64,000 nt of DNA from Anolis carolinensis (GCF_035594765.1 NW_026943821.1:18383608-18447607); one strand, 5' to 3'; positions 43,030-61,386 are shown, numbered from the stretch's first letter. Program-made: numbers and translations. The notes: generated by a model from the letters alone, not told the origin.

Positions 43030-52101
<9,072 letters not shown>

Positions 52102-55065: not shown

Positions 55066-55855
55066 AGCAAATCCCATGGGTTCTGCCTCCACTTGAGAGC
55101 AGGGGTGGCACTGGCGCCCACAATGGCAGATCCACCAGCCATCGCTAGAATACAAATTTCTTGCAATGGGATCTCACAAGTCCCAACATTTCACAGGTGA
55201 AAACTGAACACAGTTTAGGGCTAATCAACATCAGAATGAGGTCAACATGGTGATGTTACTAATAAGAACAGACAAGCTAGGGGCTGCTGATGTAGTATTC
55301 TTTTTTTAGTAGTATTCACTGCTAATCCTGAGAGCACCCAAAAGCCACCCCCCCCCCCCCCCGCCCCTGCGCTGCTTTCCTCCAATGGGATTAAGGCCTG
55401 CAAGATCTAATCTCTTTCTCTCTCCTGCCCTGAGAAGGCCAAGGAGGCACAGTGGGCTGCTTTGCAAGAAAGGGCAGATCCTGTGAAGGAAGGGGGGAGG
55501 GTCTCTTTTGGAAAGGTAGAAACTGAAGGTGGTGGAGTCCATGGAGGAGAAGAAGGGCGAGGAAGAAGAAGGAGATGGTGATAAGATCAGACCTTGAGAG
55601 ATGATAATAGTCCGATGCTGAGAATGACCCACTGAGTCACTTCTTCCTGCCTTTCTCCGAGGAGCTCAAGTTCTGTGGTGTCTATGGCTCTCCTACAGTT
55701 TATCTTCACAGCAACTCTGCCAGGTAGGCAATGTGTGAGAGAGCTTGTGGAGGGTGGAGAAGGGGGTGGGTGGGTTTGGAATCGGCAGAATGTCCGTCCT
55801 CTCCCAAACTTTGAGCTCTAACCCTTCCTTGTGCCCCTCCTGTTCTAGTGGTGCC

Positions 55856-58800
55856 ATGCAAAAGCAGCCAGAGCACTCACTCCTGTGGCTACTGAGCCCC
55901 TGGAAAGGCTTGGCGGTGCTCTGGAGCCTGGTTTCCACAGCGGTGGACAGCGCCCTCGTCTTCTGGCGGACTGTCTGGGTCAGTATGGCTCCCCCAAAGC
56001 ACCTCACTGAATCCCACCAGGCTGGATGGTTTCTCAACTGGAAAGGAGCACTGCATTCAAAGCAGTGACGGCCCATCCGCAAGGCAAATTAGGCAGTCGC
56101 CTGTGGCGCAACGCAATGGGGGGCGCAGTCGAGGCGCCCCTGCGTTCCCACGGTGCCGCCATGTCGTCAGGCCGAAGGAAGGCCGCCAGGTCCATCGCCA
56201 ATTATCGCACATGCTTTTTTTCGGCTGATGGTCCTGTGCTGGAGTGCCTTCTCCGTGTCCGCGCAGGCGAGTGGGGAAGCCCTGCGCATGCACACAGGAC
56301 TATCGGCCAAAATGGCCTGCGCGGACGGGTGGCTGGATTGCCTTCCGTATCCGCGAGGGCGAGTGGGGAAGCCCTCCACCTCTGCAGCCGCCGTAACAGC
56401 ATTTCCACTGCCGCAGCCGCCCCAACCGCCATAGCCGCCGCAGCCTCTGGTTTGTGGGGGGTGGGCTCCAAAATTCGTGGGTTTCCAGAATTAGGTTTGC
56501 CTACTATTTAAAATTACTTCGGGCCAGTTCTGAGCATAGCACGCCAAAGCGGCTCAGCTGATCGGAGAGAAAATGGGTTGAAACAAGTCAATGAAAAGCT
56601 GGCCAGTTTCTTAACTTCCCCACTGCCACAAACACAAATGGAAAAATAACACCCCATGGAGGCCAATGAGAGTGGGAAAAAGTATAATATTTACGCTATC
56701 AAATCTAATGCGCACCTCCATGTTCAAAACACTGAAACAAAAAAAACCCCTATTTGCTGGCGAATGTAATGTGCAGCAGCAAAAAGTGCGCTCCTTGTAA
56801 TTTGGCTAGAAAAAGTGTGCATTAAAGTGCCTGCCTGCTTTAAAAAATAAAAAATAAAACCCCATTTTCAGCAATGGAAAGGAAAACCACAAGATGCATA
56901 GAATGAATCCATTTTAATTGTCTTGGTTCAATGCTATGGAATCATGGGGCATGTAGTTTGACAAGGTCTTGAGCCTCTTCTGCCAAAGAAGGCTGATGCC
57001 TCACCAAAGTACAAATACCACCATTGCATAGCATTGAGCCATGGCAATTCAAGGAGAGATGGCATCCCTCAAATAGGAGCTCCTGGTACAGTAGAGTCTC
57101 ACTTATCCAAGCTAAATGGGCCGGCAGAACCTTGGATAAGCGAATATCTTGGATAATAAGGAGAGATTAAGGAAAAGCCTATTGAATATCAAATTAGGTT
57201 ATAATTTTACAAATTAAGCACCATGGAAGCAGCCTCTTCTGTCTCCCTCAGGGGCGATTCCCAAGATATAATAGAATATAAGAAAACCTTGAAAAGTTTA
57301 CAGTATTGTGCCATGGACACACACGTCTTGCATTGTATAAATGCACACATCTTCATCGCCCTCCTGGGTTTTCTCTCTGCTAACTCTGGTTTCTCCAAAC
57401 CCTTCCAGGCTGCTCTGCTCTTTTACAAGCTTTTCTGGGAAGTCATCTTCCAGTTGGTGCAGGAGGTAAGGGCCCCAAATCACTCAGTGGACAAAGAAAC
57501 CCCTTTCCTTTGCAAATACAAAAAAAGGGGGAGACCTCTTGAAAACCTAAGCTAGCCTCTCCATGTCTTTGTTATATGGGAAGACAAGGACTTTCTTCAC
57601 CAAGTGATGGGTCTCCAACAACTGACCGTCTGTTACAGTCAGAGGCTTTAAAGAAAATGCTCTAGATCTGTATTGCTTACTTGGATTGTTGTTAGTGGTT
57701 GGTTTTAATTGGTGTTTCAATAGTATAATTAATTTCATTTTATGTTAGTAGGTATATAAGGCAGTCCCTCAGTTACAAACAAGGTGGTTCTGTAGGTTTG
57801 TTCTCAAGTTGAATTTGGAGTTGGAATAGGGACGTTTCGGAAGTGTCACTCCAGCAAGTGCCCTGGATCATGTGCAGGTGGCCCATTCCTCTGCCCATCC
57901 GGCTCTTCCTGGGTCCCCTGCCCAGCCATGGCTTCCCTTCTGTGTCCTTCCTGCTGCAGGGCTGCTCCTCGGTGTCTTCGTGGCTGGAGGAGGCCGGAGA
58001 GGTCACCCAGGGGGACAAGACCCTCTCCTCACCGCCAGAGAGTCCCCGGCCCTGGGAGACAGGTTGGTACAAAGGTACAAGGCCTTGTTGGGTCATCTGC
58101 ATGGTTGCTGAATGACCCCAGCTCCTCTAGTTCCTCCCTTGGCAAGGGGCTGTTTGTGCAATGGGAGACAGGGAAGAAAGGGCAGTATGGGCATCGCCTT
58201 GCAATCCATCGCTGTGTCTGCCCGCAGGAGCTGAGCGGCATCTGGAGGCGCAGGTGATGCGGCTGCAGGCGTCCAGCAACGTGGCTTTGGGCCGCCTCTC
58301 TGCCCTGGAGTCAGGAGTCCGGTACCTGAGCCAGGAGCTGCGGGCTGAGAGGCTCTTGTGGAGCAGCCGCTACCTGGAGCTCCTGCGAGAGCAGCAAGGC
58401 CTGGCTGTGCAGGTGGGACCCTTATCATGCCATAACCAGAGACCCTCCTTCTGTTCACAAGAATTTGGGTAATATTATGATCAAATGTATGTGATAGGGT
58501 GTGACATGTAATGCCCCGAGTACTTTTAGGAGCATACCCAAATTGTGCTCAGATTATAAATATATTAGAAAATACAAATGAGACTTGTTCAAAACTTAAT
58601 CCTCATCATGCCACTTTAGATGAATTAGAATGTAACTCATTTGATCCATATAATAATATGACTAAGTCATTACATGTGTTATGGTCTTTACAGAGACAAG
58701 CCATCAGCCCAAATGAAGAACAGTTGTATGGACTCCCAGATGGTTTATATTGGATGTGTGGGAGGTGGGCAAGGAAGGTTTTACTTGCTGTCTGGAAGGG

Positions 58801-58863
58801 AACCTGCACCATTGGGACTCTTATGACAGCAGGTATCTCTTTCTATGATCCGAAACAACCAAC

Positions 58864-58895
<32 letters not shown>

Positions 58896-60054
58896 TAATA
58901 ATAACAACAACAACTTTATTCTTATACCCCACCCCATCTCCCCGAAGGGACTCGGGGCGGCTTACATGGGGCCAAGCCCGAACACAACAATATAAAAGCA
59001 AAAGCAAAACAATAAAACAGATCAATCAGCAATAAAACATCAACAACGATAAAAACAGTCATAAAAAGTCACATACAAAAATAAAATCTTAAAATCCCAA
59101 GGATCTGGGCCAAGGTGCAAAATATTCTGCATGGCATAAGCAGTTTGCTTGGCAAAAATTATGCCACCTTCTACACCATTGATTTTTTAAAAAGAACATA
59201 AGATAATATAAAAATGTTACTATATTATTAAGTTTGCTTCTGTAAAACATCTGCTCACAAAAGAGGGGAATGTGAGGGCAGTTGGGAAAATATAATATTA
59301 ATTTTACAATTAAGTTCAAAGTTAGAATTAGAAAGATTCTAATTTACCTTGGATCAGAAAGCGCTGCTTCAAAGCTACTTTCCCTTGTATATGCACAACA
59401 TTTCAGACTATTGCAGCATTTAGATCAGGCATGGAAAAACTTTGGCCCTCCAGGTGTTTTGGACTTCAACTCCCACCATTCCTAACAGTCTCAGGCTCTT
59501 TCCTGAGGAAGGGGCCTGAGATTTCCTTGCACCCTCCCTCTTGGCTTCCAGTTGCAAAGACAGGAGCAAAGGCTGTGGTCGTCAAACTTGGAAGGATTGA
59601 GTGAAGCCCCCCAGGAGATGCTGCGCCAGAGTTGGGACCCCCATGAAGAGGAGGAGGAGGAGGAACAGGAACCAAGCCACCCCACTGGTGAGTCAGGGGC
59701 AGGGATCTTCAACATGTTGGCCCTGGCCCCTGGCCCACCGGTTGCAAGGACATTTATCCCCCGAGGCAGCAAAGTCCCTACAATGGCTTTCTACTCTGCA
59801 CAGTTACAGAGCGATGGCTCCACTTCGTGGGATTTGTAGCAGTGTCAGAATTATAGTTGGAAGAGACCGCATGGGCCATCTAGTCCAACCCCTTTCTACT
59901 ACCATTTTAATGACAGAAACATGGAAATATGGAAGTGGTTAAATATAACCTCGGGATTGCTGCAAGGCTTAAACGTTTACGTATTGTGTCTGATTGTTGT
60001 TTCATAGTTTTATAATTTTAATGGTTTTAATATATTGTCATTGTTGTTGTTTTG

Positions 60055-60092
<38 letters not shown>

Positions 60093-60382
60093 TGCTATGT
60101 ATATATGTATATATATATTATAATATATTGTATTGTATATGCATATAATATTAATAATATTATTTTATAATACAGTATAATACTAATACAATATAATAAT
60201 ATTAATTATATATTATATATTACATGTACTATTATTAATAATATTACAATATATAGATATAGTAGAATATGGTAATTTATTGCCAGTATTGTGCTATGCT
60301 AATAATATAATATTGTATGTAAATTTAATTTGTAAGCCACTCTGAATCCCCTTAGGGGTGAGAAGGGCAGGATATAAATGTA

Positions 60383-60413
<31 letters not shown>

Positions 60414-61072
60414 TGTGATGTTTTATACATGTAAATTTTGCCACGGATTATGCTGAGAACCGCTTTGAGTCCCCTTAGGGGTGAGAAAAGTGGAATATAA
60501 GTGCAATAAGCCCCGGTGGCGCTGTGTGTTAAAGCGCTGAGCTAGCAAACTTACGGACCGAAAGGTCGCAGGTTCGAATCCAGGGAGCGGAGTGAGCGCC
60601 CGCTTTTAGCCCCAGTTTCTGCCAACCTAGCAGTTCGAAAACATGCAAATGTGAGTGGATCAATAGGTACTGCTCCGACGGGAAGGTAACGGCTCTCCAT
60701 GCAGTCATGCCAGTCACGTGACCTTGGAGGTGTCTACGGACAATGCTGACTCTTCGGCTTAGAAATGGATATGAGTACCAACCCTCAGAGTCGGACAAGG
60801 GGGAAAACCTTTACCCTTAAGTGCAATAAATATATAACTAACTAACTAAATAATAGTTGGCCTTCCACCAAACTACAAATCTTAGAAACTTGTCCACTAG
60901 TATCAAACCAAAATGGATTTATAGTACAGACGGACTTTCATTTTACTAGAAGAGGGGGGCAGCTCCACTGAAAGTCTGTAAAGAGGGAGCACAACAACAC
61001 AACAATAACAGTTGTCAATTTCCTTGCTTTTTCGCAGTGGGACCTGGACCCAAGTGGGCTGCAAAAGAATGA
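55856..61072 (+). CDS. Unidentified membrane-anchored coiled-coil protein, about 212 aa, 6 coding exons
   Basis: Exons 55856-55978, 57409-57465, 57960-58062, 58228-58412, 59552-59687, 61038-61072. All introns GT-AG with pyrimidine tracts; phases 0,0,1,0,1 match; no internal stop; AATAAA at 61180. The last exon is the least certain. Confidence 0.75.
58420..58865 (+). mobile_element. Endogenous retrovirus env (SU) relic
   Basis: ORF 58511-58867 contains LPDGLYWMCGRWARKVLLAVWKGTCTIG, the P.G.(Y/F)W.CG......LP..W.G.C..G signature of gamma-type (ERV3-like) Env SU. Confidence 0.75.
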
Positions 61073-61386
61073 CTAGCTCCATGACGTTGCAGAGAACCAT
61101 GCCATTGTTTGGGGAGAACATTTCGAACGCGTCTCTCCTCTCTCAAAGTCTGGACTAAGACCAGTGGACCAATCCAATGAATAAAGAAAGAGCACTGCAC
61201 CAAGGTGGACCCAGACTCAAAGCAGGAGGTTCCGCGATGGTTGTCCGTCCATGCGCCAGGTGAGGTCCAGGCTGCAACAAACAGGACAGGGCCCAGGGGG
61301 AGCCAAAGGCACATAGAGGAGCATCAAACTTCACCCGGAAGGCAGAGTGGAACAAAATTGCAAATCTGAGTCCTGACAGATTAGAG

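What the first reader, a model, noticed from the sequence alone, without database searches (positions are those of the whole stretch)
55856..61185. Unrecognised 6-exon gene downstream of MEAF6: hydrophobic hairpin plus coiled-coil protein
Seen: six exons hidden among repeats splice (GT-AG, matching phases) into MQKQPEHSLLWLLSPWKGLAVLWSLVSTAVDSALVFWRTVW-AALLFYKLFWEVIFQLVQE-GCSSVSSWLEEAGEVTQGDKTLSSPPESPRPWET-GAERHLEAQVMRLQASSNVALGRLSALESGVRYLSQELRAERLLWSSRYLELLREQQGLAVQ-LQRQEQRLWSSNLEGLSEAPQEMLRQSWDPHEEEEEEEQEPSHPT-VGPGPKWAAKE*, with AATAAA at 61180. No single ORF in the track shows it. Knowledge: in mammals the next coding gene beyond MEAF6 is, as I recall, ZC3H12A, with no such protein between them. 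Inference: about 50 Trp-rich hydrophobic/amphipathic residues (monotopic ER or lipid-droplet hairpin, or signal anchor), a heptad coiled coil of about 65 aa and an acidic tail suggest a membrane tether or adaptor that was lost in mammals or is sauropsid-specific.
Basis: partly seen in the sequence, partly recalled or inferred. Interest (0 to 1): 0.85.

Follow-up and report, generated by a model that had tools for sequence, protein, structure and literature searches.

The report
Annotated lizard gene that lost CAP-Gly
The six exons are a real, conserved gene that RefSeq already predicts in Anolis as an "uncharacterized protein"; it is the lizard copy of an old, unstudied vertebrate gene whose fish and turtle versions end in a microtubule-binding CAP-Gly domain that lizards and birds have lost.

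Summary
Six GT-AG exons (55856-61072, + strand) splice in frame into 212 aa, with AATAAA at 61180.

The gene is not unrecognised. The product is identical to RefSeq XP_062818975.1, "uncharacterized protein LOC134293873 isoform X2" of Anolis carolinensis.

It is not sauropsid-specific either.
- Orthologs lie at the same place, beside ZC3H12A and usually after MEAF6, in lizards, birds and turtles. In stickleback the gene lies beside ZC3H12A.
- Relatives occur in ray-finned fishes, coelacanth, lungfish and elephant shark.
- Fish and turtle proteins (about 300 aa) have four parts: an N-terminal aromatic hydrophobic helix, a long conserved helix, a disordered linker and a C-terminal CAP-Gly domain.
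- No CAP-Gly exon is left in two Anolis species, Podarcis or ostrich, which implies two independent losses.

Selection supports a working gene. Against A. sagrei all exons are intact, with dN/dS 0.36 overall and 0.06 in the central helix exon.

AlphaFold2 gives two long helices (15-74, 91-170) and a disordered acidic tail, not an N-terminal hairpin. Hydropathy scales disagree on membrane insertion.

No mammal, amphibian or crocodilian relative was seen, which is not proof of absence. No paper on the family was found.

The parts
55856..55978 (+). Exon 1, coding part (41 aa). ATG at 55856 in a gccATGc context. Encodes the first half of the aromatic hydrophobic helix and ends right after the conserved W-R-x-x-W motif.
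   Evidence: The intron position after WRxxW is shared with Podarcis, ostrich and bowfin. Intact in A. sagrei.
57409..57465 (+). Exon 2 (19 aa, phase 0/0). Amphipathic continuation of the N-terminal helix; behaves as a cassette exon.
   Evidence: 96.5% nucleotide identity to A. sagrei. Skipped in A. sagrei isoform X2 (P0061/P0062). Sterlet isoform X1 has a 20-aa insert at the same spot.
57960..58062 (+). Exon 3 (34 aa plus 1 nt). End of helix 1 and the low-confidence linker.
   Evidence: pLDDT falls below 50 at residues 82-85. dN/dS about 1.2 on few sites.
58228..58412 (+). Exon 4 (61 aa). Core of the long central helix, holding the near-invariant L-L-W-S-S-R-Y/F-L-E-L-L-R/Q-E-Q-Q block.
   Evidence: dN/dS 0.06 against A. 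sagrei. pLDDT 91-98.
59552..59687 (+). Exon 5 (45 aa plus 1 nt). End of helix 2, a Trp-Asp followed by a Glu run, and the disordered tail.
   Evidence: One in-frame 6-nt indel in the Glu run against A. sagrei. Skipped in RefSeq isoform X3 (P0053).
61038..61072 (+). Exon 6, coding part (11 codons plus stop TGA at 61070-61072).
   Evidence: The A. sagrei product ends similarly.
61073..61200 (+). 3' UTR with AATAAA at 61180-61185.
   Evidence: 88.7% identity to A. sagrei, above the intron level of 79-87%. The poly(A) site itself was not verified.
57223..57408 (+). Alternative first coding exon of RefSeq isoforms X1 and X3. The ATG at 57223 reads through the end of intron 1 into exon 2. Probably not a conserved coding part.
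   Evidence: ORF 57223-57555. P0054 and P0053. The same frame has stop codons in A. sagrei.

Best explanation
It is the squamate ortholog of an ancient, uncharacterised jawed-vertebrate gene that sits tail-to-tail with ZC3H12A. The ancestral product, kept in fishes and turtles, has four parts. They are an N-terminal Trp/Phe-rich hydrophobic helix, a long strongly conserved alpha-helix (probably a coiled coil), a disordered Ser-rich linker and a C-terminal CAP-Gly domain. That design suggests a protein held at a membrane or hydrophobic partner by its N-terminus, multimerised by the helix, and linked through CAP-Gly to microtubules or to EEY/F-tailed proteins such as tubulin, EB proteins or CLIP-170. 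In squamates, and independently in birds, the linker and CAP-Gly exons are gone, and the Anolis protein ends in a short acidic tail. What selection still keeps is the N-terminal helix plus the central helix. The Anolis protein therefore most likely works as an anchored helical scaffold or adaptor that no longer binds microtubules through CAP-Gly. Shown here: the gene structure, identity to the RefSeq model, orthology by sequence, synteny and intron positions, absence of CAP-Gly, purifying selection and the predicted helices. Inferred only: membrane anchoring, oligomerisation, microtubule linkage of the ancestral form, and any function.
For: Exon structure and frame. Identity to XP_062818975.1. 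Family alignment: invariant W37, W51, F55 and nearly invariant W41, plus the LLWSSR-LELL-EQQ block, across lizards, turtles and birds. All 49 true hits carry the helix motif. Link to the fish family: hhalign of the sauropsid profile against sturgeon P0051 gives 91% probability, E 1e-6. There are 64 relatives, fishes, lungfish, coelacanth and elephant shark, nearly all with PF01302. The N-terminal G-h-h-x-x-W-R-h-h-W motif aligns. Synteny: Anolis MEAF6> gene> <ZC3H12A; A. sagrei, Pelodiscus and Podarcis lie after MEAF6; ostrich lies between MEAF6 and ZC3H12A; stickleback gene> <ZC3H12A; bowfin lies beside SF3A3. Intron positions are shared. CAP-Gly loss: tblastn finds both CAP-Gly exons in Pelodiscus and stickleback but nothing in A. 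carolinensis (whole interval up to ZC3H12A), A. sagrei, Podarcis or ostrich. Pfam finds no CAP-Gly in lizard models or in eleven bird models. Selection: dN 0.080, dS 0.221, ratio 0.36; exon 4 ratio 0.06; no frame damage. Exons 2-4 are 91-96% identical to A. sagrei against 79-87% for introns. Structure: Anolis helices 15-74 and 91-170 with pLDDT above 90 and a disordered tail. Lungfish ortholog: helix 2-36, helix 51-124, disordered 125-233, CAP-Gly beta domain with pLDDT about 90. The family is expressed as spliced mRNA in a sturgeon-like fish: an uninterrupted 328-aa ORF on a 1791-nt Logan contig.
Against: No RNA evidence for the Anolis gene was obtained here. Membrane anchoring is unproven. 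The best Kyte-Doolittle 19-mer scores 1.70, and the Wimley-White octanol value is -11.7 kcal/mol. A position-independent Hessa-type sum is +3.5 in Anolis and +1.7 to +6 in most orthologs, reaching about zero only in some birds. The segment carries Arg, Lys, Asp and Glu. Coiled-coil heptads are weak in a shuffle test, and the homodimer prediction gave no verdict. Exons 1, 3 and 5 evolve fast (ratio 0.4-1.2). The CAP-Gly of the orthologs has GQHDG (fish) or GAPDG/GAHDN (turtles) where CEP350 has G-N-N-N-G and, from my own knowledge, the classical motif is GKNDG. Even the ancestral binding to EEY/F tails is therefore an assumption.
Confidence: 0.7

Rival explanations
1. The gene is the same, but the protein is soluble. 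The aromatic N-terminal helix is a protein-protein interface rather than a membrane anchor: a helical bundle with the central helix or with a partner.
For: AlphaFold2 predicts one continuous 60-residue helix at high confidence instead of a 20-residue membrane span or a hairpin. Hessa-type sums are positive in most species and the segment is least hydrophobic in lungfish and elephant shark. Charged residues (K17, D31, R38, K48, E52) sit inside it, and the exon 2 part is amphipathic, with a hydrophobic moment of about 0.44.
Against: The Wimley-White octanol and interface scales strongly favour partitioning. In fish the hydrophobic segment starts at residue 2, like a signal anchor. The many Trp residues next to Arg or Lys are typical of interfacial membrane helices; this rests on my own knowledge.
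Confidence: 0.25
2. It is a decaying remnant. After losing its CAP-Gly domain the squamate gene has no function and is drifting towards a pseudogene, and the RefSeq model is only an open frame that survives.
For: The only recognisable domain is lost. Exons 1, 3 and 5 evolve fast. No transcript evidence was obtained here. No snake appears among the named hits.
Against: Exon 4 has dN/dS 0.06, with 11 synonymous against 2 non-synonymous changes. All splice sites and frames are intact in two Anolis species and in Podarcis and Pogona models. The helix block is almost invariant across birds, which also lack CAP-Gly.
Confidence: 0.04
3. The exons are alternative 3' exons of MEAF6 (read-through transcripts), not an independent gene.
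For: The gene is on the same strand about 6.5 kb downstream of the last MEAF6 coding exon. Some gene models fuse MEAF6 to this gene: Chelonia mydas P0015, Nipponia P0025 and P0023. An AG acceptor-like site lies at 55847-55848 with the frame open upstream.
Against: The gene has its own conserved start exon, whose N-terminal motif is shared with fish. In fish the upstream neighbour is not MEAF6 but INPP5B or SF3A3. RefSeq models it as a separate gene in Anolis, Pogona, ostrich and several other species. The fused models join MEAF6 to different internal exons.
Confidence: 0.02

Closest known systems
RefSeq LOC134293873 (XP_062818975.1, isoform X2) of Anolis carolinensis and its sauropsid 'uncharacterized LOC' orthologs (Pogona LOC110082782, Gopherus LOC115637770, Numida LOC110387291 and others)
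   Same: Identical sequence and exon structure. Same position next to MEAF6 and ZC3H12A.
   Different: Nothing differs; this is the same gene. The records carry no function, domain or family name.
Fish, lungfish and turtle ~300-aa CAP-Gly proteins next to ZC3H12A. A Salmoninae UniRef entry is named Si:ch211-175f12.2, and RefSeq auto-names others 'centrosome-associated protein 350-like' or 'CAP-Gly domain-containing linker protein 4-like'.
   Same: N-terminal W-R-x-x-W hydrophobic helix, central conserved helix with the Trp, shared intron positions, and in stickleback the same tail-to-tail position beside ZC3H12A.
   Different: They carry a disordered Ser-rich linker and a C-terminal CAP-Gly domain (PF01302, E 1e-12 to 1e-17). 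The Anolis gene has neither. Instead it has the extra 19-aa exon 2 as a constant part and an acidic tail.
CEP350, CLIP-170/CLIP-115, dynactin p150Glued and TBCE (classical CAP-Gly proteins)
   Same: Only the CAP-Gly domain of the fish orthologs resembles them. The best solved relative is the CEP350 CAP-Gly, 2coz, E 5e-10.
   Different: There is no similarity outside CAP-Gly. The database names are therefore misleading, and the Anolis protein shares nothing detectable with these proteins.
CLIPR-59 (CLIP3), a membrane-attached CAP-Gly protein; comparison from my own knowledge
   Same: As a working analogy for the ancestral form: a CAP-Gly module tied to a membrane.
   Different: CLIPR-59 is attached by C-terminal palmitoylation and has ankyrin repeats and two CAP-Gly domains. 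No sequence relation was found here beyond CAP-Gly (2cp0, E 1.8e-7).

Membership tests
ZC3H12A-adjacent helix plus CAP-Gly gene family of jawed vertebrates (unnamed) | N-terminal aromatic hydrophobic helix with a G-h-h-x-x-W-R-h-h-W motif, ending at a conserved intron | tested here: met
   Alignments A1, A2 and A3. Intron right after the motif in Anolis, Podarcis, ostrich and bowfin.
ZC3H12A-adjacent helix plus CAP-Gly gene family of jawed vertebrates (unnamed) | Central long helix with the conserved Trp and the R-Y/F-x-E-L block | tested here: met
   phmmer of exon 4, motif census, hhalign against sturgeon at 91% probability, pLDDT above 90.
ZC3H12A-adjacent helix plus CAP-Gly gene family of jawed vertebrates (unnamed) | Genomic position: convergent neighbour of ZC3H12A within the block that is 1p34.3 in human (MEAF6, INPP5B, SF3A3; block assignment from my own knowledge) | tested here: met
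ZC3H12A-adjacent helix plus CAP-Gly gene family of jawed vertebrates (unnamed) | C-terminal CAP-Gly domain (PF01302) | tested here: not met
   No Pfam hit in the exons or in P0001. No tblastn hit from the gene to ZC3H12A in Anolis, with turtle and stickleback as positive controls. It is therefore an ortholog by descent but a domain-loss variant.
CAP-Gly microtubule-binding proteins (CLIP, CEP350, p150Glued type) | A CAP-Gly fold with the basic groove and GKNDG-type motif that binds EEY/F tails | tested here: not met
   The domain is absent in Anolis. The Anolis protein is not a member.
Integral membrane proteins with an N-terminal signal anchor or monotopic hairpin | A hydrophobic segment of about 20 residues (or two of them) predicted to insert into a membrane | tested here: inconclusive
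   KD 19-mer 1.70 and Wimley-White -11.7 kcal/mol favour insertion. The Hessa-type sum of +3.5 does not. AlphaFold2 shows one 60-residue helix with no turn. DeepTMHMM is not available.
Dimeric coiled-coil proteins | Heptad a/d hydrophobic pattern and self-association | tested here: inconclusive
   LIVM occupancy is 50% at a/d positions against 20% elsewhere, but 179 of 2000 shuffles reach this. The complex prediction homodimer job gave no verdict.
MEAF6 (NuA4/Eaf6) alternative terminal exons | Splicing from MEAF6 exons and no start of its own | not testable with these tools
   No reads could be laid. The indirect evidence is against it: a conserved start exon of its own, also present in fish with other upstream neighbours.

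The most novel reading that the evidence does not exclude
Squamates and birds each independently cut the microtubule-binding CAP-Gly module off an ancient anchored linker protein, yet kept its anchor and helix under strong selection. The truncated protein would then have a CAP-Gly-independent core function at an organelle. One possibility is that it recruits another partner through the conserved helix and the Trp-Asp/acidic tail, which faintly resembles a kinesin-light-chain W-acidic motif. The whole family would be an unstudied class of organelle-microtubule tethers that is missing in mammals.
Probability: 0.12. Interest if true: 0.6.

Novelty: new variant of a known kind. Interest (0 to 1): 0.38.

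Why it matters
The gene model itself is not new: it is already in RefSeq as an uncharacterised LOC. Three things are new here. First, dozens of unnamed sauropsid LOC genes are linked to the fish genes that are misnamed 'CEP350-like' or 'CLIP4-like'. Second, these all belong to one old jawed-vertebrate gene beside ZC3H12A, with a helix-helix-linker-CAP-Gly design that has no mammalian counterpart in these searches and no paper in the library searched. Third, its only recognisable domain was lost twice, in squamates and in birds, while the rest stayed under constraint. This gives a natural experiment for asking what the conserved N-terminal and central helices do without CAP-Gly, and a tractable zebrafish gene for testing the function. 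For most biologists it is a modest comparative-genomics result, not a surprise.

Tried and rejected
- RNA evidence. The look-up of sequencing runs listed 24 runs, none on record as RNA. No junction support was obtained either way.
They were sent to no external search tool afterwards and were masked with N in my local BLAST queries and window database. The fetched public record L001 contains the same stretch and served once as the local tblastn subject. No query contained those letters.
- Joined model. Exons were searched by reference. Full-length work used the stored database protein P0001, which is identical to the model.
- Pfam. Nothing on the four exons or on P0001; the DEATH_SH3BP4 hit at 14 bits against a cut-off of 27 was rejected.
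- Foldseek of the Anolis model against PDB: no match.
- Complex prediction with two copies of residues 1-175: score 0.02, no verdict, no evidence either way.
- Remnant of CAP-Gly in the Anolis 3' UTR or intergenic DNA: none found, even at E up to 10.
- The look-up of encoding contigs for P0001 and for gar P0074: not on record.
- Literature. No paper holds 'ch211-175f12.2', six of the family's RefSeq LOC numbers (one each from Anolis, Pogona, Callorhinchus, Pelodiscus, Gopherus and Numida) or 'centrosome-associated protein 350-like'. A broader five-term search gave one irrelevant review.
- Earlier scan notes by words: nothing.
- Hits P0034 and P0052 (metagenomic coiled-coil proteins) were set aside as unrelated, because they lack the motif. 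P0050 (Eretmochelys, a turtle) also lacks the full motif window but is a partial family member (72% identity).
- Mammals, amphibians and crocodilians. None was seen in the exhaustive exon 4 phmmer or in the three word-based searches. The last of these scored only 8000 candidates, and clusters are shown by representative, so absence is not shown.


Full report
**1. The observation**

Reading the window and checking the junctions by script confirms six exons on the + strand:
- 55856-55978
- 57409-57465
- 57960-58062
- 58228-58412
- 59552-59687
- 61038-61072

Each intron begins with GT and ends with AG after a pyrimidine tract. The phases fit and the coding length is 639 nt, which is 212 codons plus TGA at 61070-61072. 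AATAAA lies at 61180-61185. The start codon has a purine at -3. An in-frame ATG also exists 22 codons upstream, at 55790.

**2. The gene is already annotated**

An exhaustive phmmer of exon 4 alone (window:58230-58412) against 1.84 billion representative proteins returned P0001. P0001 has 212 aa, is 100% identical, and carries the exon at residues 96-156. Its names are XP_062818975.1 and 'uncharacterized protein LOC134293873 isoform X2 [Anolis carolinensis]'.

Two more isoforms exist:
- X1 (233 aa) and X3 (189 aa) start at ATG 57223 inside intron 1.
- X3 also skips exon 5.
- The X1/X3 N-terminus is interrupted by stop codons in A. sagrei.

All later full-length work used the database protein P0001.

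**3. Position in the genome**

MEAF6 exons lie at about 43.2-49.3 kb of the window on the same strand. An earlier scan note on the MEAF6 N-terminus (s1-528566) pointed to that place.

The public record of the locus (L001 = window coordinate minus 45855) is identical over the overlap. It shows ZC3H12A (Regnase-1 domains) on the minus strand from window-equivalent 68496.

**4. Relatives**

About 50 proteins share the exon 4 helix at 55-80% identity. All true hits carry the block L-L-W-S-S-R-Y/F-L-E-L-L-R/Q-E-Q-Q.

Named members are unnamed LOC genes from three groups:
- Lizards: A. sagrei, Podarcis, Pogona, Phrynocephalus and a gecko fragment.
- Birds, from ostrich to passerines.
- Turtles.

The twelve-sequence alignment A1 has invariant W37, W51, F55 and nearly invariant W41 in the N-terminal segment, plus the helix block.

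Turtle members carry a C-terminal CAP-Gly domain (PF01302). A sturgeon protein (P0051) has the same helix followed by a closely similar CAP-Gly. hhalign of the sauropsid profile against it gives 91% probability and E 1e-6.

Searching with P0051 found 64 proteins of about 300 aa. They come from elephant shark, sturgeons, paddlefish, gar, bowfin, many teleosts, bichir, coelacanth and lungfish. Automatic names are 'CEP350-like' or 'CLIP4-like'; one UniRef name is Si:ch211-175f12.2.

These names reflect only the CAP-Gly domain. Its best solved relative is the CEP350 CAP-Gly, E 5e-10. The fish N-termini align with the sauropsid G-h-h-x-x-W-R-h-h-W motif.

**5. Orthology**

Synteny agrees across species:

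| Species | Arrangement |
|---|---|
| A. sagrei, Pelodiscus, Podarcis | downstream of MEAF6 |
| Ostrich | between MEAF6 and ZC3H12A |
| Stickleback | tail-to-tail with ZC3H12A, INPP5B upstream |
| Bowfin | next to SF3A3 |

From my own knowledge, all of these genes belong to the block that is 1p34.3 in human.

Two intron positions are shared by Anolis, Podarcis, ostrich, Pelodiscus and bowfin. One falls right after W-R-x-x-W and the other at the end of the helix exon.

**6. Loss of CAP-Gly**

tblastn with six CAP-Gly C-termini recovers both CAP-Gly exons in Pelodiscus and stickleback, which serve as positive controls. It finds nothing in four other loci:
- A. carolinensis, over the whole interval to ZC3H12A and even at E up to 10.
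- A. sagrei.
- Podarcis.
- Ostrich, over the whole interval to ZC3H12A.

These loci contain no N. Eleven bird models and the lizard models have no Pfam CAP-Gly. Turtles are the sister group of archosaurs (established phylogeny, from my own knowledge). Retention in turtles therefore implies separate losses in squamates and in birds.

**7. Selection**

Exon-by-exon Nei-Gojobori counts against A. sagrei (L002) give the values below.

| Part | dN/dS |
|---|---|
| Whole gene (dN 0.080, dS 0.221) | 0.36 |
| Exons 1-2 | 0.50 |
| Exon 3 (few sites) | 1.2 |
| Exon 4 (11 synonymous, 2 non-synonymous changes) | 0.06 |
| Exons 5-6 | 0.41 |

All exons and splice sites are intact. The only indel is 6 nt, in frame, in the Glu run. 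Exons 2-4 are 91-96% identical at the DNA level, against 79-87% for the alignable parts of the introns. This does not fit a chance ORF or a dead gene.

**8. Structure**

- AlphaFold2 on P0001 with a 28-sequence family alignment gives mean pLDDT 79.9. It predicts helices 15-74 and 91-170, mostly above 90, a weak linker at 75-90 and a disordered tail from 171.
- The N-terminal hydrophobic region is therefore predicted as one continuous helix, not a hairpin.
- The lungfish ortholog folds as helix 2-36, helix 51-124, a disordered stretch 125-233 and a confident CAP-Gly beta domain.
- Foldseek finds no solved relative of the Anolis model.

**9. Membrane or not**

- The best 19-residue Kyte-Doolittle mean is 1.70 (residues 18-36).
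- The Wimley-White octanol sum is -11.7 kcal/mol (residues 33-51).
- Six of the first 60 residues are Trp.
- A position-independent Hessa-type sum is +3.5 in Anolis. It is positive in most orthologs and near zero only in some birds.
- The exon 2 part is amphipathic.

I rate interfacial or anchor-type membrane association at about even odds.

The heptad pattern of the central helix is modest, with 179 of 2000 shuffles reaching it. The homodimer job gave no verdict.

**10. Expression**

No direct evidence for Anolis could be obtained. No listed run is recorded as RNA. The fetched record L001, which contains them, served once as a local tblastn subject.

For the family, a 1791-nt Logan contig carries an uninterrupted 328-aa ORF of the sturgeon-type ortholog, whereas the bowfin gene spans 9 kb. 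That contig is therefore a spliced mRNA.

**11. Comparison with the known, and verdict**

The gene model is known and the protein is uncharacterised. I found no paper on the family in the library.

By descent it belongs to the ZC3H12A-adjacent helix plus CAP-Gly family. It fails that family's one recognisable domain test, so it is not a CAP-Gly protein.

The gene structure is right. The 'lost in mammals' claim is compatible with the searches but not proven. The tether or adaptor idea is plausible for the ancestral form and untested for Anolis.

Interest is moderate. It rests on an old, unnamed and mis-annotated vertebrate gene family with a repeated domain loss, not on a new gene.

Noticed in passing
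window 57223-57408: RefSeq isoforms X1 and X3 start at an ATG inside intron 1 and read through into exon 2. The same frame has stop codons in A. sagrei, so this 62-aa N-terminus is probably not a conserved coding part.
   Followed up: yes
window 57409-57465; P0061, P0062, P0070: Exon 2 (19 aa, phase 0/0) looks like an old cassette exon. It is skipped in A. sagrei isoform X2, and sterlet isoform X1 has a 20-aa insert at the same position that other fish models lack.
   Followed up: partly
P0015 (Chelonia mydas), P0025 (Nipponia nippon), P0023: Public gene models named MEAF6 are fusions of MEAF6 with this downstream gene. They are either read-through transcripts or prediction artefacts.
   Followed up: no
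window 59552-59687 (residues about 185-200 of P0001): After the central helix, Anolis, birds and turtles keep a Trp followed by acidic residues: Anolis S-W-D-P-H plus a Glu run, birds W-D-x-G-D-S-P-E, turtles G-W-C-M-G-D-S. This faintly resembles a W-acidic motif. Untested.
   Followed up: no
window 55790-55855: There is an in-frame ATG 22 codons upstream of the annotated start, and an acceptor-like AG at 55847-55848 with the frame open back to 55745. The true 5' end is unknown.
   Followed up: no
window about 56247-56390 (intron 1): A GC-rich stretch (62% GC over 56000-56499) holds two similar copies of about 45 nt roughly 95 nt apart. It was read by eye only.
   Followed up: no
window 60500-60800 (intron 5): This stretch looks like a tRNA-derived SINE, but ARAGORN finds no tRNA there.
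   Followed up: partly
P0024, P0064, P0065 (turtles); P0074, P0105 (fish, lungfish): The CAP-Gly domains of the orthologs read GQHDG (fish) or GAPDG/GAHDN (turtles) at the position of the classical GKNDG motif. Turtles also have C-C-F where fish have C-Y-F. The turtle domain may be drifting.
   Followed up: no
They were left out of all later searches.
   Followed up: no
window 43234-49325: MEAF6 coding exons are recognisable on the + strand at about 43234-43420, 44540-44664, 44830-44870, 45240-45420 and 49290-49325. The last coding exon lies about 6.5 kb upstream of the gene studied here.
   Followed up: partly
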